Notes: a model not told the origin generated them from the letters alone. A DNA stretch of 64,000 bases from IMGVR_UViG_3300019776_000324:186001-250000; one strand, 5' to 3'. Counted from the stretch's first letter, positions 13,823 to 22,828 are shown. A program made the numbers and translations.

Positions 13823-13854
13823 CAAAATAAGTCATTTAGTTGTATAATAGCTGT

Positions 13855-14883
13855 ATGACTACAACTACAGCTCCTCGTATTGGTTTTGCTTGCAAATGGA
13901 TCGATGAACCCAGCCAGGTCAACGGCATTAAGCCCAAAGATCCAGCAAAAGCATATAACACTGGATCAACCACAGTGCGCTGGCTAAACAACCAAACTCG
14001 AGATGTAGCCGAACAAAAGTTGTGGGACTTAATGGTTCAAAATATTGAATCGACCCGTAAACTAGTAGAAAGAGTAGGTACATTAAATGATAATCTTAGA
14101 ATGGTCCGCCTTAGCAGTGATCTCTTGCCTGTCTATACTCATGACGATTGGAAGTATTTTTGGCGCCGTGAAGATGTTAGACAGTACGCAGAAACTCACT
14201 TTGAACAAGTGGGTAACTTGGCAAGGTCATCTAATACTCGTCTCAGTTTCCATCCTGGGCAATTTACTGTGTTGGCATCTGATAACCCGGGCATTGTTGA
14301 CCGTTCAATAGAGGAGTTTGAGTATCATGCAGATATGGTCCGTTGGATGGGTTTCGGAAAAGAATTCCAAGATTATAAGATTAACGTACACATCTCAGGC
14401 CGTCAAGGGCCAGAAGGTATCAGAGCCGCCTACAAGAGATTGTCACCTGAGGCTCGTAACTGCATCACCATCGAAAACGAGGAAATAACACATGGGCTCC
14501 AACATACTCTTATGCTTTCTGATATTGTTCCTACTGTCTTGGACATTCATCATCACTGGGTCCGCGAGGGCGAATACATACACCCCAGAAGCGACAATTG
14601 TAAAAGAGTTATTGACAGTTGGAGGGGTACTCGTCCTACTATTCATTATGCTCTTAGTCGTGAAGATTATCTTGTCGGACATGATGCGACCTGTGCCCCC
14701 GACCATAAAGCACTTCTCGAATCCGGGCATAGTAAGCAAAAACTAAGAGCGCATTCGGACTTCTATTGGAATCATGCTACTAATGAATGGGCATTGAGTT
14801 TCTTAGAAGATTTTGATATTATGTGCGAGTCTAAGGGCAAGAATCTTGCTAGTCGTGCATTATATGAGCAATGGAAAAAGTAG
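13855..14883 (+). CDS. uvsE: UV-damage endonuclease (UvsE/UVDE)
   Basis: RIGFACK, RLSSDLLP, RLSFHPGQF, INVHISG, ITIENEE, LDIHHHW, AHSD, DIMCESKGK; TTGACA/TATAAT promoter at 13819-13848. Confidence 0.93.
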   Translation: MTTTTAPRIGFACKWIDEPSQVNGIKPKDPAKAYNTGSTTVRWLNNQTRDVAEQKLWDLMVQNIESTRKLVERVGTLNDNLRMVRLSSDLLPVYTHDDWKYFWRREDVRQYAETHFEQVGNLARSSNTRLSFHPGQFTVLASDNPGIVDRSIEEFEYHADMVRWMGFGKEFQDYKINVHISGRQGPEGIRAAYKRLSPEARNCITIENEEITHGLQHTLMLSDIVPTVLDIHHHWVREGEYIHPRSDNCKRVIDSWRGTRPTIHYALSREDYLVGHDATCAPDHKALLESGHSKQKLRAHSDFYWNHATNEWALSFLEDFDIMCESKGKNLASRALYEQWKK

Positions 14884-15098: not shown

Positions 15099-15388
15099 TG
15101 GAATGGATTACAAACAGTTGGCAGTATGTTAAACAAGATTGGGCAAGTAATCGAGTTAGATTCTGCGCAGAAGTATTTGCGTGGTCGTGTAGTGTAACTA
15201 GTGCTGTAATCTTTGCCGTTACAGTTCCAGATATTCCTGTAGTGCCGCTTTACAGTATTTTTATTGCTGGATGTTGTGCTAGTGCCTGGGCTTGTTGGAC
15301 TAGACGGAGTTTTGGATTGCTCGCCAACTCCGCCTTCCTAGTTACTATTGATAGTATAGGATTAATCCGGTATTTCTTACAGCATTAA
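15089..15388 (+). CDS. Small integral membrane protein (3 TM)
   Basis: Three hydrophobic segments. Confidence 0.6.
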   Translation: MVIVEWITNSWQYVKQDWASNRVRFCAEVFAWSCSVTSAVIFAVTVPDIPVVPLYSIFIAGCCASAWACWTRRSFGLLANSAFLVTIDSIGLIRYFLQH

Positions 15389-15594
15389 ACCTTAGGAGCT
15401 TTAGGTTTACGGGCAGTTTTGGCCTTTACACCGGGTTTCTTTTCACCTTGGATTTTTGCTGGACGAGTAGTAGCCTTCTTAACAGTAGGTTTTTTAACTT
15501 CTACTGGTTGCTCCACCTTGGGTGCTTCCACCTTGTATGGTGCTGGTGTTTCTGCTGGTTTAGAGCCAAAAAGTTTCTTAAAAAATTCTAACAT
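15385..15594 (-). CDS. Lys/Pro/Ala-rich basic protein
   Basis: MLEFFKKLFG amphipathic start after AGGAG SD; histone-H1-like low-complexity tail. Confidence 0.6.
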   Translation of the reverse strand: MLEFFKKLFGSKPAETPAPYKVEAPKVEQPVEVKKPTVKKATTRPAKIQGEKKPGVKAKTARKPKAPKV

Positions 15595-15787
15595 AATAAT
15601 CTCCTTATGCATGTATTTAACCGTTTTAATCATTAACGGTTAATATTATTATTGCATTGCCGCAATATATACTATATACTACTAGTGAAAACCATGAGAG
15701 AAAATACTATGCCAAAACATGAACGAATTGCTTTATTGCTATTGTTGGCAATACTAGCAGTCATGCTGGTAACCATTTAAGATTATT

Positions 15788-15934
15788 ATGACAAAAATTA
15801 TAGAACAATTTATGCACTTATTTGCCAAGGATGCAAGTGCCCTAGAACAATTCCTAAACTCACGCAATTTAAAAACCCATGCAGATGTAGAGTTTTGGAC
15901 ACGCTATTTTGAAAATAAAGGAAAAGTATTATGA
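15788..15934 (+). CDS. 48-aa protein, DUF3563-like (not in the ORF track)
   Basis: MTKIIEQFMHLFAKDASALEQFLNSRNLKTHADVEFWTRYFENKGKVL*; coupled to a 46-aa ORF at 15931-16071. Confidence 0.5.
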   Translation: MTKIIEQFMHLFAKDASALEQFLNSRNLKTHADVEFWTRYFENKGKVL

Positions 15935-16070
15935 AAATTATCAACGCAATTGTAAGTTTTATTCAAAGCATACGCGAAGCAAACTATGCAGCAAATTTAG
16001 CCCGTAACGGCAAAATTAAAGAATCTCAGTCTTGCTACGCTGATGCCAAAGGTATTTGTAGAGGTCTATA

Positions 16071-16625
16071 ATGATCATTACAGAATTTTTACCCGTTCAA
16101 CACTATAAACAGTTTGGCGATTGGCTAGAAATTCAAGACGAAGAAACTCGTCAACTGTACTTTGGTGTAGCTGGTAGTCAACATGTGATCAACGCACTAA
16201 TGGATCGTGTACTAGCGAACCCAGACGATCATTATTTTTTAGTGGCCAAAGACGGTGCTCGTTGGGTTGGTACTATTCATATCGCTGTCAGCAACACAGT
16301 AGTAGAATTTGGTGTGATTGTTGACGAAGAATATCGTGGACAAGGAGTTGCTAATATCTTAATGGATGAAGCTCTTATTTGGGCCCGAAATCGTGGCTAT
16401 AAAGAATTGTTTATGCATTGTTTAGGTTGGAACAAGCCTATACAGCATTTGTGCCACAAGCATGGGCTGGAAACTCACAACATGTATGGTGATAGCGAAG
16501 TCGAGATAAAGTTAGACCCAGCTAATTGGATTACTATCAACAAAGAAATCTGCATAAAACAACGCAACTTGTTCCACACATTCTTGCAGAATAATAGCAT
16601 GTTATATCGTGAGATGTACGGTTAA
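16071..16625 (+). CDS. GNAT family N-acetyltransferase
   Basis: VEFGVIVDEEYRGQGVANILM acetyl-CoA motif A. Confidence 0.85.
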   Translation: MIITEFLPVQHYKQFGDWLEIQDEETRQLYFGVAGSQHVINALMDRVLANPDDHYFLVAKDGARWVGTIHIAVSNTVVEFGVIVDEEYRGQGVANILMDEALIWARNRGYKELFMHCLGWNKPIQHLCHKHGLETHNMYGDSEVEIKLDPANWITINKEICIKQRNLFHTFLQNNSMLYREMYG

Positions 16626-16632
16626 ATACTAG

Positions 16633-17337
16633 ATGACTACAATCATAGCAACCCTGGTAATGGTCCAACTTACCATAGCGTGTGTGACACTATATTTGCA
16701 CCGCGGAGTATGTCACCGAGCTGTTTCATATAATCCTGTGGTAGAACATGTCATGCGCTTTTGGCTTTGGTTAACAACCGGCATGGTTACTAAACAATGG
16801 GTAGCAATACATCGCAAGCATCATCAACGGTCAGACCAAGAAGGTGACCCACATAGCCCACAAATCTACGGCATCAAGCGTGTGTTGTTTGGTGGTGCAT
16901 TTTTATATCATGCGGCCAGCAAAGACAAGGCCATGGTTGAAAAGCTAGGAGTAGGCACACCCGACGACTGGATTGAACGGAACCTTTACACTCCACACAG
17001 CAGACTTGGCATTAGTATTATGCTTATCATTGATCTATGCTTGTTTGGCCTATGGGGCTGGTTAGTCTGGGGCATTCAAATGATTTGGGTTCCATTCTGG
17101 GCTGCTGGTGTAATCAACGGTCTAGGGCATTGGGTTGGATATCGCAACACTGATACCGCAGATACCAGTCGTAATTTAATTCCTATAGCTGTATGGATTG
17201 GTGGTGAAGAGTTGCATAATGGGCATCACGCAGATGGTGCCAATGCCAAGTTCAGTACCAAATGGTGGGAGTTTGATATTGGCTGGATGTATATTACAAT
17301 TCTTAAAAAATTAGGGCTGGCTCAAGTTCGTCAATAA
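16633..17337 (+). CDS. Membrane fatty-acid (acyl-CoA/lipid delta-9-type) desaturase
   Basis: His boxes LHRGVCH, HRKHH, HNGHH; DPHSP; WWEFDIGW. Confidence 0.93.
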   Translation: MTTIIATLVMVQLTIACVTLYLHRGVCHRAVSYNPVVEHVMRFWLWLTTGMVTKQWVAIHRKHHQRSDQEGDPHSPQIYGIKRVLFGGAFLYHAASKDKAMVEKLGVGTPDDWIERNLYTPHSRLGISIMLIIDLCLFGLWGWLVWGIQMIWVPFWAAGVINGLGHWVGYRNTDTADTSRNLIPIAVWIGGEELHNGHHADGANAKFSTKWWEFDIGWMYITILKKLGLAQVRQ

Positions 17338-17345
17338 GTATTTTG

Positions 17346-18086
17346 ATGAAAATTGTGCTGGTCACCGGTGGGTTTGACCCTGTCCATTCTGGACATATTT
17401 CTTATTTTAAAGCAGCTCGCACCATGGGCGACATGTTGATCGTTGGACTCAACAGCGACGAATGGCTTGAGCGTAAAAAGGGTCGTGCATTTATGCCCTG
17501 GAATGAAAGATTATGTGTTATTAATAATCTCTCCATGGTTGATGAAGTGTTTACTTTCAACGACGAAGATGGCACAGCCAAGCATTTTATTCAACAGGTC
17601 AGAGCACACTATCCTGAAGCTGATTTGATATTTGCCAATGGTGGAGATCGCACAGCAACAAATATTCCAGAAATGGATTGTGCTGATAAAAATTTATATT
17701 TTGCATTTGGAGTTGGTGGCGAAAATAAATCTAATAGTTCAAGTTGGATCTTGCAAGAGTGGAAAGCACCTAAAACAGAACGCCCGTGGGGACATTATCG
17801 TGTACTGCATGAAGCGCCTGGCATGAAAGTCAAAGAGCTCACAGTAGAACCTGGAAAAAGTTTAAGCATGCAACGACATGCTCAACGCAGAGAATACTGG
17901 GTAGTAGAAGAAGGCAACTGCAAGGTTGAAACAGATACCAGTACATTGTTGTTGGATACACATCAAACTATAGATATTCCAGTGGGTTCGTGGCACCGTT
18001 TAAGCAACCCATTTACTAACCCTTGTAGAATTGTGGAAATACAGTATGGCACAGCCTGCGAAGAATCGGACATAGAGCGTAAGTAA
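17346..18086 (+). CDS. Cytidylyltransferase-like (HIGH) domain fused to a mannose-6-P isomerase type II cupin
   Basis: TGGFDPVHSGH, GLNSD, FANGGDR; then ERPWG..., LSMQRH, WHRLSNP, IVEIQYG. Confidence 0.85.
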   Translation: MKIVLVTGGFDPVHSGHISYFKAARTMGDMLIVGLNSDEWLERKKGRAFMPWNERLCVINNLSMVDEVFTFNDEDGTAKHFIQQVRAHYPEADLIFANGGDRTATNIPEMDCADKNLYFAFGVGGENKSNSSSWILQEWKAPKTERPWGHYRVLHEAPGMKVKELTVEPGKSLSMQRHAQRREYWVVEEGNCKVETDTSTLLLDTHQTIDIPVGSWHRLSNPFTNPCRIVEIQYGTACEESDIERK

Positions 18087-18101
18087 TTTCACCAAAAAGA
18101 C

Positions 18102-18130
18102 TTGCAAAATGTTGCAGTGCAATATATAAT
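18102..18130 (+). promoter_or_regulatory. Sigma70 promoter with a palindromic PhaR-like operator in the spacer
   Basis: TTGCAA-17-TATAAT; TTGCA-G-TGCAA palindrome at 18112-18122. Confidence 0.6.
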
Positions 18131-18154
18131 AGATAAATAAGTTAGAGAAAACAA

Positions 18155-18209
18155 GTTAGTGCCGATGGTCGGGCTAACGCAGAAGCTCGCTTAATTTAGG
18201 AGATTTACC
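18155..18209 (+). promoter_or_regulatory. Second copy of the hsp20-type structured leader
   Basis: GTTAG/CTAAC stem around TGCCGATGGTCGGG; CTCGCT-taattt-AGGAG. Confidence 0.7.
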
Positions 18210-18458
18210 ATGCAACAATTTAATTTAGACACAATCAAAGAAGCATTGAACCCAGCCAAGTTTATTGACCAAGCTGAAAAGAACACACAGGCTGTATTGG
18301 CTTATGTAGAACCAAAAGAACTCAGCAAGACATTGGTTACTTTGACCAAAGATGCTAGCGATTTTGCTCGCGCACAAGTAGAAGCAATGAACAGTATTGC
18401 TAACCTTGTTAAAACACAAGCTGAAGATTTCGCTAAGAAATTCGCTGTAACCAAGTAA
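18210..18458 (+). CDS. Small amphipathic helical protein, phasin-like
   Basis: 82 aa, Ala/Lys/Gln/Thr-rich, all-helical pattern, no Cys/Trp; PhaR-like box upstream. Confidence 0.5.
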   Translation: MQQFNLDTIKEALNPAKFIDQAEKNTQAVLAYVEPKELSKTLVTLTKDASDFARAQVEAMNSIANLVKTQAEDFAKKFAVTK

Positions 18459-18470
18459 TTCAAGCAATAC

Positions 18471-18508
18471 AACCCAAAGCCCGTATTATGCGGGCTTTCT
18501 CTTGGGTT
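18471..18508 (+). terminator. Intrinsic terminator-like hairpin
   Basis: AAAGCCCG-tattatg-CGGGCTTT within outer AACCCAA/TTGGGTT arms. Confidence 0.65.
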
Positions 18509-20882: not shown

Positions 20883-20936
20883 TTGCTTTTCTTTAAAAAA
20901 TTTGTTATACTTACTTATCATTTATCCGGAGACAAT

Positions 20937-21527
20937 ATGCCAAACTTAGTACCCATTGTAGTAGAACAAACCTCAAAAGGCGAGCGCAGTTATGATATAT
21001 ACAGTAGACTCTTGCGTGATCGCATTGTCATGCTGGATACAGATGTAAACGAGCATACAGCCAGTTTAGTAGTGGCGCAAATGCTGTTTTTAGAATCAGA
21101 AGATCCAGACAAGGACATCCTATTTTACATCAATAGCCCAGGCGGTGTTGTTACAGCTGGCATGGCAATTTATGACACAATGAACTTTATCAAGCCCGAT
21201 GTTTCAACTGTAGTAATGGGCCAAGCATGTAGTATGGGTAGTTGTTTGGCACAAGCAGGCGCACCTGGCAAGCGTATTATTTTGCCCAATGCTAGACACA
21301 TGATTCACCAGCCATCAGGTGGTGCTCGTGGACAAGCAACAGATATTCAAATCCAAGCACAAGAAATATTAAAAATGAAGAAATACTTAACAGAGATTTA
21401 TGTCAAGCATAACAGTGCTGGTAAAACCTTTGAAGAATTAAGTGCTGATATGGAACGCGACTTCTTTATGAGTGCTGAAGAAGCTGTGGCCTACGGCCTA
21501 GCTGATCGAGTAATTAGCAGTAGATAA
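20937..21527 (+). CDS. clpP: ATP-dependent Clp protease proteolytic subunit
   Basis: [33 protein letters not shown] (Ser), MIHQP (His), ERD (Asp). Confidence 0.97.
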
Positions 21528-22828
21528 TGTCCTTTAACCAAACCTTTTGCTCAAGCCCGTGGTTTCATATGCGAATTAATAATTCGGGTTCATATGAATA
21601 CTGTAGGTGGCAGCAAAGGGATGGTGAATATCGTGTTGATCTAGAGAATAATATACAGCAACAAGCACCCTTGGTATATTTTCAAAAGACCATGGCACCT
21701 TTACGAGCTAGCATGTTAAATGGCCTGGCAATTGATGGCTGTAAAGACTGCTATAAAATGGAACAGCACGGCAAAGTAAGCGGACGCCAGAAACAACTGT
21801 TAAAAACAGGAATTCAACAACAGTATTTTGAAAAAAGTTTAATCAGTAGCCCATTAAAAGCAGACTTTGATTACAGCAATCTTAATCACGGGCAGACACT
21901 GAGGACTGTAGTTGACTGGCAAATAGATCTGGGCAATTATTGTAATGGAGCCTGTGTATTTTGTATTCCCGAAAGCTCTAGCAAACTGGCCACGGAATTT
22001 AAACAATTAAAGCTGATAGATAAACTACCCCCAAGATCCTGGTGTGATGATCCTGTACTGTTAGAAAAGTTTATTAAAGATTTAATTGCGAGTCCCAGTC
22101 TTGAGTATTTGCATTTTATTGGCGGCGAAACATTAATTACTCCAGGATTTAAAAAGATATTGCAGGCATTAATTTCAGCTGATCTGTCTCGAAATATAAC
22201 CATTGGGTTTACTACCAATCTTATTTCCTGGGACGATGAATTAATCAACAATATACTGCCCGAGTTTAAACAAATTAATCTTGGACTGAGTGTTGAAGCA
22301 TTGACTGAGGTCAACGACTATGTAAGATATCCCAGCCGTTTGGCCACTACTAATGATATCTTAGACCAATGGGTTGCAATAGGAAAAGCTCAAGGCTGGT
22401 TAATGCAACTCAGAATCACTCCAACCTGTTTGTCCATAGCAGATCTGACCACCGTTTATGATTATGCGTGGACTCATAATTTAAGTGTGGAAAGTTGTAA
22501 TTTCTTAGAAGAACCAAAATTCATGCGCATCAGTGTGTTGCCCATAGAATATCGACTGGCAATACAAGATCAAATGAAAACCTGGCTGGCAAGCAAAACT
22601 GATATTTCCCAAGAGCAGATCATCAACACTAGAAATCCTGAGTTTGCCCGCCAACAAATTTGTCAAGATGCTGAAAGTTATATCAATTATCTTGAAACTG
22701 CTGTTGATGAAAGCTATCGATTACCTGACTTGATTGATTATCTAAAACGATTAGAATCAATTCGTAATAATAGCATTATAGATTATCTACCACAATATGA
22801 AGAATTATTCAGAAGTCAAGGATATTAA
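21527..22828 (+). CDS. Radical SAM protein with N-terminal Cys (twitch/SPASM-like) domain
   Basis: CNGACVFC, GGE, FTTN; N-terminal FC..PW...YC and CKDC. Confidence 0.85.
   Translation: MSFNQTFCSSPWFHMRINNSGSYEYCRWQQRDGEYRVDLENNIQQQAPLVYFQKTMAPLRASMLNGLAIDGCKDCYKMEQHGKVSGRQKQLLKTGIQQQYFEKSLISSPLKADFDYSNLNHGQTLRTVVDWQIDLGNYCNGACVFCIPESSSKLATEFKQLKLIDKLPPRSWCDDPVLLEKFIKDLIASPSLEYLHFIGGETLITPGFKKILQALISADLSRNITIGFTTNLISWDDELINNILPEFKQINLGLSVEALTEVNDYVRYPSRLATTNDILDQWVAIGKAQGWLMQLRITPTCLSIADLTTVYDYAWTHNLSVESCNFLEEPKFMRISVLPIEYRLAIQDQMKTWLASKTDISQEQIINTRNPEFARQQICQDAESYINYLETAVDESYRLPDLIDYLKRLESIRNNSIIDYLPQYEELFRSQGY

What the first reader, a model, noticed from the sequence alone, without database searches (positions are those of the whole stretch)
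15640..18458. Candidate carbon-storage/lipid module wired to a host PhaR-like repressor
Seen: the promoter of the phasin-like gene has TTGCA-G-TGCAA between -35 and -10. The promoter at 15652-15680 (TTGCAT-17-TATACT) has a related ATTGC-C-GCAAT palindrome. It drives tiny ORFs (DUF3563-like) and a GNAT, followed by a fatty-acid desaturase. Known: PhaR binds TGC-N3-GCA-type sites upstream of phasin genes and is released when PHA granules form. Inference: the phage may read the host's polyhydroxyalkanoate status and express proteins that coat or mobilise granules. The phasin call itself is tentative.
Basis: inference. Interest (0 to 1): 0.65.

Follow-up and report, generated by a model that had tools for sequence, protein, structure and literature searches.

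The report
Phage phasin-like gene behind PhaR operator
A 344-kb freshwater jumbo phage, and its relatives, carry a lipid-desaturase operon and a small phasin-like gene whose promoters hold the DNA box that bacterial PhaR, the repressor that senses storage-polyester granules, binds. The phage may therefore switch these genes on according to the host's carbon reserves.

Summary
The window lies in a 344,244-bp phage with terminal repeats.

- **Genes.** GNAT (16071-16625) and a DesA-type desaturase (16633-17337) are confirmed. A nucleotidyltransferase-cupin gene (17343-18086) was overlooked. No DUF3563 match was found.
- **Operator.** The dyad at 18112-18122 contains TGCAGTGCA. This fits the published PhaR cores (TGCRNYGCA) and the boxes I read upstream of phasin genes in 22 Legionellales and 2 Chromobacterium loci.
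- **Unbiased scan.** A matrix built only from those bacterial boxes puts its best hit in the whole phage genome on this promoter. The operon promoter (TGCATTGCC, 15653-15661) ranks 17th.
- **Conservation.** The box recurs about 80-105 nt before the gene in 10 of 16 related loci, in relatives with proteins down to about 30% identical. One subclade has a 4-nt-spaced variant.
- **No phage PhaR.** The phage encodes no PhaR.
- **The 82-aa protein.** It is an amphipathic helical hairpin. Similarity to phasins is weak but reproducible at profile level (hhalign P of 4e-4 to 1e-3). It fails Pfam Phasin_2.

Verdict: host-PhaR wiring is well supported computationally. The phasin identity is plausible but unproven, and the host is unknown. 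Confidence about 0.5.

The parts
15595..15708 (.). Divergent intergenic control region between a minus-strand Lys/Pro-rich 69-aa gene and the plus-strand operon
   Evidence: Sequence. The homologous region is conserved in relatives, with the motif box - ATAAATA - (C)AGTAGAAAC.
15649..15665 (.). Degenerate PhaR-type box TTATTGCATTGCCGCAA. Its core TGCATTGCC (15653-15661) has one mismatch to TGCRNYGCA.
   Evidence: Scores 6.8 bits on the bacterial PhaR-box matrix, rank 17 of 344,228 positions. Relatives have perfect boxes here (L128 TGCACTGCA, L134 TGCGTCGCA) or the same GCC variant (L129, L002, L137).
15709..15780 (+). Small ORF of 23 aa (28 aa if started at 15694) with a hydrophobic, membrane-like segment
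   Evidence: ORF list. A similar peptide follows the same promoter in L002. No family hit.
15788..15934 (+). Small conserved ORF, 48 aa, unknown function.
   Evidence: tblastn finds 49-56% identity in L003, L005-L007 and L009. No Pfam hit at E <= 1. Weak phrog_22735 hit, E 0.024.
15931..16071 (+). Small conserved ORF, 46 aa, unknown function
   Evidence: tblastn finds 41-70% identity in L002 and L004-L009. No family hit.
16071..16625 (+). GNAT N-acetyltransferase, 184 aa, substrate unknown
   Evidence: PF00583 4.5e-15. phrog_1249 5.9e-16. Conserved next to the desaturase in nearly all relatives.
16633..17337 (+). DesA-type membrane acyl-lipid desaturase, 234 aa. The three His boxes (HRGVCH, HRKHH, HNGHH) are present. 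It lacks the C-terminal ~150 aa of bacterial DesA.
   Evidence: NF049918 1.7e-118, 396.1 bits against a cut-off of 400, covering positions 10-241 of 385. PF00487. 58-65% identical to DesA of Gamma- and Betaproteobacteria. The phage copies form one clade.
17343..18086 (+). Accessory gene: cytidylyltransferase-like domain fused to a mannose-6-phosphate-isomerase-type cupin, 247 aa. Probably sugar-nucleotide metabolism. Not part of the conserved core.
   Evidence: PF01467 5.4e-13 and PF01050 1.4e-27. rfaE domain II 7e-21. Present only here and in L129, absent in the other relatives.
18102..18130 (+). Sigma-70-type promoter of the 82-aa gene: TTGCAA, 17 nt, TATAAT
   Evidence: 10 of 12 match. Conserved in relatives with a variable -35. 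It does not belong to the phage's repeated TTGACC early-promoter class.
18109..18125 (.). PhaR-type operator ATGTTGCAGTGCAATAT. The core TGCAGTGCA (18113-18121) lies in the promoter spacer.
   Evidence: - Fits TGCRNYGCA and the 21-nt S. meliloti consensus.
- The same 9-mer occurs in phaP promoters of Legionellales and Chromobacterium.
- Best matrix hit of the whole genome, 19.1 bits.
- The only intergenic copy of the core among 11 in the genome.
- Conserved in relatives.
18131..18209 (+). Conserved structured leader. It has a hairpin at 18155-18178 and an invariant CTCGCTTAA (18186-18194) that can pair with the Shine-Dalgarno AGGAG (18198-18202).
   Evidence: Alignment A4 has 79% mean column identity. 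RNAalifold finds 18 pairs, 4 with compensatory changes. Only a weak ROSE_3 hit, E 0.64.
18210..18458 (+). The 82-aa (9.1 kDa) amphipathic two-helix protein (called p82 in this report), a candidate phasin-like granule-binding protein
   Evidence: - 524 unnamed metagenomic homologues; only 18 clusters at 50% identity.
- AF2 pLDDT 84, helices 15-30 and 36-81.
- Mean hydrophobic moment 0.365 against 0.207 shuffled.
- hhalign against Legionellales phasins: P 4e-4 to 1e-3.
- Nearest named atlas clusters are Phasin_2, PHB_acc and PHA_synth_III_E.
18476..18498 (+). GC-rich hairpin, probable terminator, which would make the 82-aa gene monocistronic
   Evidence: Terminator-like scan. The sequence is followed by TTTCTCTT.

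Best explanation
This is a conserved accessory module of a clade of freshwater jumbo phages. It has two transcription units, each with a PhaR-type operator (core TGCRNYGCA) overlapping its core promoter.

- **Unit 1** (from about 15650) encodes two or three tiny peptides, a GNAT acetyltransferase and a DesA-type acyl-lipid desaturase. In this phage it also encodes a nucleotidyltransferase-cupin enzyme.
- **Unit 2** (promoter 18102-18130) is a monocistronic gene with a conserved structured leader. It encodes a 9-kDa amphipathic helical hairpin, p82, that resembles small phasins.

**Proposed mechanism**
1. The phage has no PhaR of its own, so the host's PhaR would occupy the operators when it is free in the cytoplasm. 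That blocks RNA polymerase.
2. In a host that is making polyhydroxybutyrate granules, PhaR is drawn onto the polymer surface and both units are derepressed.
3. p82 would then bind the granule surface, and the desaturase would remodel membrane lipids. One relative carries an isocitrate lyase in this slot, which would feed storage-derived acetyl-CoA into the glyoxylate shunt.

**Shown here**
- The genes, the operator sequence, and its match to bacterial PhaR boxes.
- Its position and its conservation.
- The absence of a phage PhaR.
- The fold class of p82.

**Inferred**
- PhaR binding and the direction of regulation.
- Granule binding by p82.
- The physiological pay-off.

My sub-estimates:

| Claim | Probability |
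|---|---|
| The operator is a real selected element | 0.9 |
| It is read by host PhaR | 0.65 |
| p82 acts on PHA granules | 0.45 |
For: **Match to known PhaR sites**
- Published PhaR sites are YTKNTGCRNYGCANMAR in R. eutropha (PMC12849132) and WNWDDNYGCRNYGCRNHHWNW in S. meliloti (PMC12542648).
- Window 18107-18127 fits the S. meliloti consensus at every position, and the core fits both.
- In 22 Legionellales loci and 2 Chromobacterium loci, phasin genes lie beside phaR (28 loci with PhaR; Pfam check).
- Those phasin genes carry TGCAnYGCA boxes upstream of -35 and just after -10. Several are exactly TGCAGTGCA.

**Unbiased scan**
- A 17-nt matrix built from those 40 bacterial boxes puts its best hit of the 344-kb phage genome at window 18109-18125 (19.1 bits; the next best is 14.4, in coding sequence).
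- The operon promoter ranks 17th.

**Conservation in relatives**
- In relatives whose p82 is 28-96% identical, the top matrix hit of the locus lies 78-102 nt before the p82 start in 10 of 16 loci.
- The second-best hit often lies on the operon promoter (sequences).
- Only the R, N and Y positions vary between relatives.
- 7 of 11 cores in 93 kb of related loci fall in the 140 nt before p82.
- The core is otherwise depleted in the genome: 11 observed against 28.5 +/- 5.7 expected.

**No phage-encoded reader**
- No PHB_acc_N or PhaR-like ORF in the phage.

**p82 as phasin-like**
- hhalign against Legionellales phasins scores 25.8, P 4.2e-4. 200 column shuffles gave 10.9 +/- 2.1, maximum 18.0.
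- The tool's own hhalign gives P 0.0011. It aligns the most conserved motifs of both families (AEKN--T with AELNVKT; LAYVEPKEL with LxYLKPEEL).
- 2 of 25 family members give sub-threshold Phasin_2 hits.
- The only named families among the nearest atlas clusters are Phasin_2, PHB_acc and PHA_synth_III_E.
- The AF2 helical hairpin has the architecture described for L. pneumophila PhaP (PMC11067923).
- Its hydrophobic moment equals that of Legionella PhaP.

**Context**
- GNAT, desaturase and p82 are syntenic even in distant relatives.
- One relative has isocitrate lyase, desaturase, p82.
Against: - No experiment and no expression data. No RNA run holds the region.
- p82 fails every profile-to-sequence test. 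There is no Phasin_2 hit at E <= 10 in the genome. The Legionellales phasin HMM ranks p82 11th of 3026 ORFs, E 8.7. The p82 profile does not find the phasin in five bacterial genomes.
- HH probability is only 20-34%.
- Structural matches do not discriminate. PhaP 5ip0 has Z 6.4 at rank 18, within the background of helical hairpins.
- One subclade (L002-L009) has a 10-bp dyad TGCGGTCGCA with 4-nt spacing in the spacer, which does not fit the PhaR core. L004, L005 and L009 have no good box before p82.
- A 19-bit site somewhere in the genome is not rare: 7 of 40 shuffled genomes reach it.
- The operon box in this phage has a mismatch in a conserved position.
- The host is unknown, so a host PhaR is assumed. 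The desaturase tree does not place the phage clade inside any bacterial order.
- Box predictions in phage genomes have failed before. PMC10976474 reports that PhoB-box prediction in a cyanophage was unreliable.
Confidence: 0.5

Rival explanations
1. The dyad is a real operator, but it is read by something other than host PhaR, such as a phage-encoded regulator or another host factor. p82 would then be an unrelated small helical phage protein, and its resemblance to phasins reflects only amphipathic helices.
For: - p82 has no significant phasin hit by HMM.
- Helical hairpins match many unrelated structures.
- The subclade L002-L009 keeps a dyad with different spacing (TGCGGTCGCA). That is easier to explain by a co-evolving phage regulator.
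- The two promoters also share non-PhaR elements (ATAAATA ... AGTAGAGAA) found nowhere else in the genome.
Against: - The box equals bacterial phaP operators over 15 of 17 positions, and it is the best genome-wide hit of a matrix built only from bacterial boxes.
- Variation among relatives is confined to the positions that are also free in PhaR sites.
- Three independent weak lines point to PHA-associated proteins for p82.
Confidence: 0.25
2. The promoters are PhaR-controlled, but p82 does not act on granules. It could be a membrane or lipid-binding partner of the desaturase, a chaperone-like stress protein, or a decoy that titrates PhaR or host phasins.
For: - p82 is almost always next to the desaturase.
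- The atlas also lists PHB_acc, a PhaR domain, among the nearest families.
- Phasins are reported to have chaperone-like effects (discussion in PMC11067923).
- The phage carries no PhaC or PhaZ.
Against: - L134 has p82 without a desaturase or GNAT.
- The architecture and amphipathicity equal a small bona fide phasin.
- No evidence for any specific alternative partner.
Confidence: 0.15
3. It is a chance palindrome in an AT-rich promoter, and conservation reflects only recent common ancestry.
For: A site scoring this well appears in 7 of 40 shuffled genomes. Several loci are close relatives (L122 and L125; L005 and L006).
Against: - The box persists where the protein is only 28-40% identical and the flanking intergenic sequence has diverged.
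- 7 of 11 cores sit in 1.9% of the related sequence.
- The same box recurs at the second promoter.
Confidence: 0.04

Closest known systems
Bacterial PhaR-phaP autoregulatory circuit (R. eutropha phaP1; S. meliloti AniA/PhaR regulon; L. pneumophila phaB1-phaB2-phaR-phaP)
   Same: - The same operator core, TGCRNYGCA, with GT/AC flanks, placed over the core promoter of a small amphipathic helical protein gene.
- A two-helix protein of about 9-11 kDa.
   Different: - It lies on a lytic-type jumbo phage genome that has no phaR, phaC or phaZ.
- There is one box inside the spacer rather than two boxes flanking the promoter.
- p82 does not reach the Phasin_2 threshold.
- A long conserved leader RNA, absent from the bacterial genes I read, precedes the gene.
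Cyanophage genes controlled by host regulators (pstS and other genes under host PhoBR; PMC10976474)
   Same: A phage gene of host-like function carries the binding site of a host nutrient-status regulator, so its expression follows host physiology.
   Different: - The regulator here would be a repressor released by a storage polymer, not a two-component activator.
- The signal is carbon storage rather than phosphate.
- It is untested here, whereas PhoB binding was shown by gel shift.
Cyanophage Delta-9 lipid desaturases (vFAD; PMC5776448)
   Same: A phage-borne membrane fatty-acid desaturase acting as an auxiliary metabolic gene.
   Different: - This one belongs to the proteobacterial DesA family (NF049918) and is truncated at the C-terminus.
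- It sits in an operon with a GNAT, behind a PhaR-like box, in a non-cyanobacterial jumbo phage.
Pfam Phasin_2 (PF09361) small phasins of Legionellales
   Same: - Similar length (96 aa against 82 aa).
- An N-terminal MxQxNF motif.
- A Y-x-x-P-x-E-L linker between two amphipathic helices.
- Equal hydrophobic moment.
   Different: About 20-31% identity over the aligned part. There is no HMM-level match, and the HH probability is 20-34%.

Membership tests
Phasin_2 (PF09361) | Match to the family HMM above the gathering score (24.9 bits) | tested here: not met
   No hit for the window protein at E <= 1 and none in six frames of the genome at E <= 10. 2 of 25 family members reach 16-17 bits, E about 0.008.
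Phasin_2 (PF09361) | Profile-profile similarity to bona fide phasins | tested here: inconclusive
   hhalign P is 4.2e-4 (probability 34%) and 0.0011 (probability 20%). 0 of 200 column shuffles reach the score.
Phasin_2 (PF09361) | Small, all-alpha, amphipathic architecture | tested here: met
   AF2 pLDDT 84, helices 15-30 and 36-81. Hydrophobic moment 0.365 against 0.207 +/- 0.04 shuffled, equal to Legionella PhaP at 0.37. This feature is not specific.
Phasin_2 (PF09361) | Binding to PHA granules | not testable with these tools
   Needs localisation or an in vitro binding assay.
PhaR regulon (operator) | Palindromic core TGCRNYGCA with a single central base | tested here: met
   TGCAGTGCA at 18113-18121. 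The 21-mer fits the S. meliloti consensus. At the operon promoter there is one mismatch, TGCATTGCC.
PhaR regulon (operator) | Site overlaps or flanks the core promoter of the regulated gene | tested here: met
   It lies between -35 and -10. In relatives it lies in the spacer, over -35, or just after -10.
PhaR regulon (operator) | Conservation of the site in orthologous promoters | tested here: met
   It is the top matrix hit at -78 to -102 in 10 of 16 related loci. The exception is subclade L002-L009, which has a 4-nt-spaced dyad.
PhaR regulon (operator) | A PhaR protein present in the cell and binding the site | not testable with these tools
   The host is unknown and the phage has no PhaR. 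Binding needs a gel shift or footprint.
DesA family fatty acid desaturase (NF049918) | HMM score at or above the curated cut-off (400 bits) over the full length | tested here: not met
   396.1 bits, covering positions 10-241 of 385. The C-terminal third is absent.
DesA family fatty acid desaturase (NF049918) | Three histidine boxes of membrane desaturases | tested here: met
   HRGVCH, HRKHH and HNGHH are in the translation. They align with Legionella DesA.
GNAT (PF00583) | HMM match above the gathering score | tested here: met
   56.4 bits against a cut-off of 20.7.
   No Pfam family at E <= 1 for the 28-, 48- and 46-aa products.

The most novel reading that the evidence does not exclude
A widespread clade of freshwater jumbo phages senses the host's polyhydroxybutyrate status by borrowing the host's granule-sensing repressor PhaR. 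It uses that signal to time a viral phasin mimic and carbon and lipid genes (desaturase, GNAT and, in some members, isocitrate lyase). This would be the first storage-polymer-responsive regulon described on a virus.
Probability: 0.4. Interest if true: 0.8.

Novelty: new variant of a known kind. Interest (0 to 1): 0.7.

Why it matters
Phage genes that follow host nutrient status through host regulators are known for phosphate. I found no report of a phage wired to the carbon-storage sensor PhaR or of a phage phasin. The literature searches gave nothing, though the library is incomplete.

If true, infection outcome in PHB-storing freshwater bacteria would depend on their carbon reserves, and the virus would actively handle those reserves.

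The claim is directly testable with a gel shift, two reporter fusions and one localisation experiment. The 17-bp box and the leader RNA also give specific handles for finding the host and related phages.

Tried and rejected
- **Nucleotide search against deposited phages:** no match.
- **Generic phage promoter motif:** I searched genome-wide for the dyad-plus-TATAAT arrangement. It occurs only at the p82 promoter, so it is not a general promoter class. The same holds for the ATAAATA...AGTAGAGAA element.
- **First AF2 model**, from a shallow alignment: pLDDT 59. Foldseek against PDB and the atlas shape search gave nothing.
- **Second AF2 model** (pLDDT 84): Foldseek against PDB found nothing at E <= 0.001. 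VIA wide lists PhaP 5ip0 at Z 6.4, within the helical background.
- **PDB sequence search with the family profile:** nothing below E 0.16.
- **Profile-to-sequence tests between p82 and phasins, both directions:** negative.
- **Host inference from the desaturase:** the best named hits are Legionellales, but the tree puts all phage copies in one clade outside every bacterial group. I dropped Legionellales as a host claim and kept it only as a source of comparison sequences.
- **Sequencing runs:** only DNA contigs of freshwater metagenomes with small shares, and no RNA.
- **Rfam:** only a sub-threshold ROSE_3 hit on the leader.
- **Other PHA genes in the phage** (PhaC_N, PHB_depo_C, Esterase_PHB, PHB_acc_N): none.
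- it held typed protein letters and was not run. I repeated the calculation reading the sequences from the stored files.


Full report
**Where the window lies.** The window is bases 186001-250000 of a 344,244-bp virus record with direct terminal repeats, so it is a jumbo phage. GC content is about 40%. The only public runs that share words with the region are freshwater or aquatic metagenomes, all DNA.

**Genes in 15640-18458.**

| Coordinates | Product |
|---|---|
| 15385-15594, minus strand | Lys/Pro-rich protein, upstream of the divergent intergenic region 15595-15708 |
| 15709-15780 | 23-aa hydrophobic peptide |
| 15788-15934 | 48-aa ORF |
| 15931-16071 | 46-aa ORF |
| 16071-16625 | GNAT acetyltransferase (PF00583, 4.5e-15) |
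| 16633-17337 | Desaturase |
| 18210-18458 | 82-aa gene (p82), separately promoted, followed by a hairpin at 18476-18498 |

- The desaturase scores 396 bits on NCBIfam's DesA family model (cut-off 400). It covers only the first two thirds of the model and keeps the three His boxes.
- The small ORFs give no Pfam hit at E <= 1, so the DUF3563 label is not supported.
- The small ORFs are nevertheless conserved in relatives.

TTGCAA-17-TATAAT with TTGCA-G-TGCAA in the spacer is exactly at 18102-18130. TTGCAT-17-TATACT with ATTGC-C-GCAAT is at 15652-15680. The second is a weak sigma-70 match and was not listed by the scan.

**Relatives.**
- p82 has 524 unnamed homologues in the word-indexed collection, on contigs up to 341 kb.
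- The exhaustive profile search finds only 18 clusters at 50% identity in 1.84 billion proteins. The family is narrow and viral.
- I fetched 8 IMG/VR loci and further contigs for members down to 28% identity.
- The order UvdE ... small ORFs, GNAT, desaturase, p82 is kept almost throughout.
- The nucleotidyltransferase-cupin gene is present only here and in L129.
- L137 has isocitrate lyase, desaturase, p82. L134 has p82 without the desaturase.

**The operator.**
- Two papers give PhaR sites. R. eutropha has YTKNTGCRNYGCANMAR, with sites next to -35 and around the transcription start of phaP1 (PMC12849132). S. meliloti has WNWDDNYGCRNYGCRNHHWNW, confirmed by gel shifts (PMC12542648).
- The window's TGCAGTGCA (18113-18121) fits the core. 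The 21-mer at 18107-18127 fits the S. meliloti pattern at every position.
- For an independent reference I followed the desaturase to bacteria. In Legionella, desA lies directly upstream of phaB-phaB-phaR-phaP. This is the operon described for L. pneumophila (PMC11067923).
- Phasin_2 genes were found in 51 of 61 Legionellales genomes. PhaR lies beside them in 28 loci.
- Their promoters share one architecture: TGCAnYGCA-AAAA, about 20 nt, TTGACA-17-TAnTAT, then ATTG-TGCAnTGCA-ACAT before the ribosome site. Several boxes are exactly TGCAGTGCA.
- Chromobacterium phaP has ATTGTGCAATGCAACAT and TTGTTGCAGTGCAACAT. The latter matches the phage 17-mer ATGTTGCAGTGCAATAT at 15 of 17 positions.

**An unbiased scan.**
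- I built a 17-nt matrix from these 40 bacterial boxes only. Its best hit in the whole 344-kb phage genome is window 18109-18125, at 19.1 bits. The runner-up scores 14.4 and is in coding sequence.
- The operon promoter site 15649-15665 (core TGCATTGCC, one mismatch) ranks 17th of 344,228 positions.
- The score alone is not remarkable. Shuffled genomes reach 17.1 +/- 2.5, and 7 of 40 reach 19.1. The real genome is in fact depleted of the core: 11 against 28.5 +/- 5.7, with only this copy intergenic.
- What is beyond chance is the position and its conservation. The best hit of each related locus lies 78-102 nt before p82 in 10 of 16 loci.
- The cores are TGCACTGCA, TGCGTTGCA, TGCATTGCA, TGCGACGCA, TGCGTCGCA, TGCGCCGCA and others. 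Only the R, N and Y positions change.
- The second-best hit is often the operon promoter. L128 and L134 have perfect boxes. L129, L002, L137 and the window share a ...GCC variant.
- 7 of 11 cores in 93 kb of related loci sit in the 140 nt before p82.
- So both promoters carry the element.

**An exception.** The IMG/VR subclade L002-L009 has TGCGGTCGCA (4-nt spacing) in the spacer.
- L003, L007 and L008 add a second palindrome just after -10, and this is the top matrix hit of their loci.
- L004, L005 and L009 have no good box before p82.
- I cannot say whether PhaR tolerates that spacing. This is the main internal evidence against a uniform PhaR reading.

**Who reads the box.** The phage encodes no PHB_acc_N domain. 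It has no ORF matching a PhaR profile built from 28 bacterial PhaR proteins; the best E is 0.85. It also lacks PhaC and PHB depolymerases. If the box is a PhaR site, the host's protein must read it.

**Is p82 a phasin?**

Negative results:
- No Pfam hit.
- No Phasin_2 hit in six frames.
- The Legionellales phasin profile does not pick p82 out: rank 11 of 3026 ORFs.
- The p82 profile does not find phasins in five bacterial genomes.

Positive but weak results:
- hhalign of the p82 family against Legionellales phasins gives P 4.2e-4 over 85 columns. 200 column shuffles gave 10.9 +/- 2.1 and the reversed alignment 12.8, against the real score of 25.8.
- The tool's hhalign gives P 0.0011 over the N-terminal 42 columns at 31% identity. 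It lines up the best-conserved motifs of both families.
- Two family members give sub-threshold Phasin_2 hits.
- The only named families among the nearest language-model clusters are Phasin_2, PHB_acc and PHA_synth_III_E, at scores of 0.81-0.86. These are leads only.
- With a diverse alignment, AF2 gives a confident helical hairpin: pLDDT 84, helices 15-30 and 36-81, with the break at the conserved Y-V-E-P-K. L. pneumophila PhaP is described with the same two-helix architecture.
- Amphipathicity equals that of Legionella PhaP.
- Structure search is uninformative for such a fold.

I rate phasin-like function as plausible (about 0.45), not shown.

**The leader.** Between the promoter and the start codon lies a leader conserved even in the most distant relatives. 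It has a hairpin (18155-18178) with compensatory changes. An invariant CTCGCTTAA can pair with the Shine-Dalgarno sequence. Rfam gives only a sub-threshold thermometer-like hit. This suggests a second, translational layer of control. It is unexplained.

**Host.**
- The phage uses strong sigma-70-type early promoters: about 20 copies of TTGACC-17-TATAAT.
- It uses AGGAG ribosome sites, which fits a proteobacterial host.
- The desaturase is 58-65% identical to DesA of Legionellales, Chromobacterium, Alcaligenaceae and others.
- The tree puts all phage copies in one clade (support 99) outside every bacterial group. This suggests one old acquisition and does not identify the host.

**Comparison with the known.**
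- The circuit works like the bacterial PhaR-phaP switch.
- In concept it resembles cyanophage genes under host PhoB, where box prediction alone proved unreliable (PMC10976474).
- Phage desaturases are known from cyanophages (PMC5776448).
- I found no report of a phage phasin or a PhaR-controlled phage gene, though the library is incomplete.

I class this as a new variant of a known kind. Overall confidence in the combined explanation is about 0.5.

Noticed in passing
window 18131-18209: The p82 gene has a conserved structured leader. It has a hairpin with compensatory changes, and an invariant CTCGCTTAA that can mask the Shine-Dalgarno sequence. It is present even in relatives whose protein is about 30% identical. 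Only a sub-threshold ROSE_3 match was found.
   Followed up: partly
window ~23223, 35513, 43021, 52786, 53130, 53873, 60376 (and about 13 more places in the genome): There is a family of near-identical strong promoters, cgg-TTGACC-17-TATAAT-AGTaGTATAGTTAATAA, followed by AGGAG. They are probably the phage's early class, read by host sigma-70. The two promoters of this finding do not belong to it.
   Followed up: no
whole genome G000: The PhaR-type core is depleted in the phage genome. TGCRNYGCA occurs 11 times against 28.5 +/- 5.7 expected, and YGCRNYGCR 22 times against 59 +/- 8. This could be palindrome or restriction-site avoidance, or avoidance of stray repressor sites.
   Followed up: no
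L019 2962-6358 with L092; L018 with L091: In Legionella bozemanae, L. tucsonensis and at least seven other Legionella loci, desA lies directly upstream of phaB-phaB-phaR-phaP. This mirrors the desaturase-p82 neighbourhood of the phage.
   Followed up: partly
L015 2944-2952: A Legionellales MAG has a perfect box TGCATTGCA about 30 nt upstream of its desA start codon. A desaturase may therefore be PhaR-controlled in a bacterium too.
   Followed up: no
L137 849-2108: A distant relative carries an isocitrate lyase gene in the slot of the GNAT, behind a box TTGTTGCAATGCCACAT (17.1 bits). It is followed by the desaturase and the p82 homologue.
   Followed up: partly
L010 (CAIRZD010000009.1, 2.7 kb): A short contig binned in an 'uncultured Bacteroidetes' MAG carries a desaturase that nests inside the phage clade next to L007. 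It is probably mis-binned phage DNA.
   Followed up: no
window 17343-18086: This is a fusion of a cytidylyltransferase-like domain (rfaE domain II-like) with a type-II mannose-6-phosphate-isomerase cupin. It is inserted between the desaturase and p82 only in this phage and in L129.
   Followed up: partly
window 13840-14883, 15385-15594 (-), 20883-21527, 21527-22828: The neighbouring genes are a UV damage endonuclease UvdE, a Lys/Pro-rich 69-aa protein, ClpP protease and a radical SAM protein. Relatives have two ClpP genes here.
   Followed up: no
L003, L007, L008 about 84 nt before the p82 homologue; L002-L009 promoter spacer: One subclade replaced the 3-nt-spaced box in the spacer with TGCGGTCGCA (4-nt spacing). 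Some members added a long perfect palindrome just after -10, for example ATATTGCGTCGCAATAT and ATGTGGCAATGCCACAT. Both arms changed together.
   Followed up: partly
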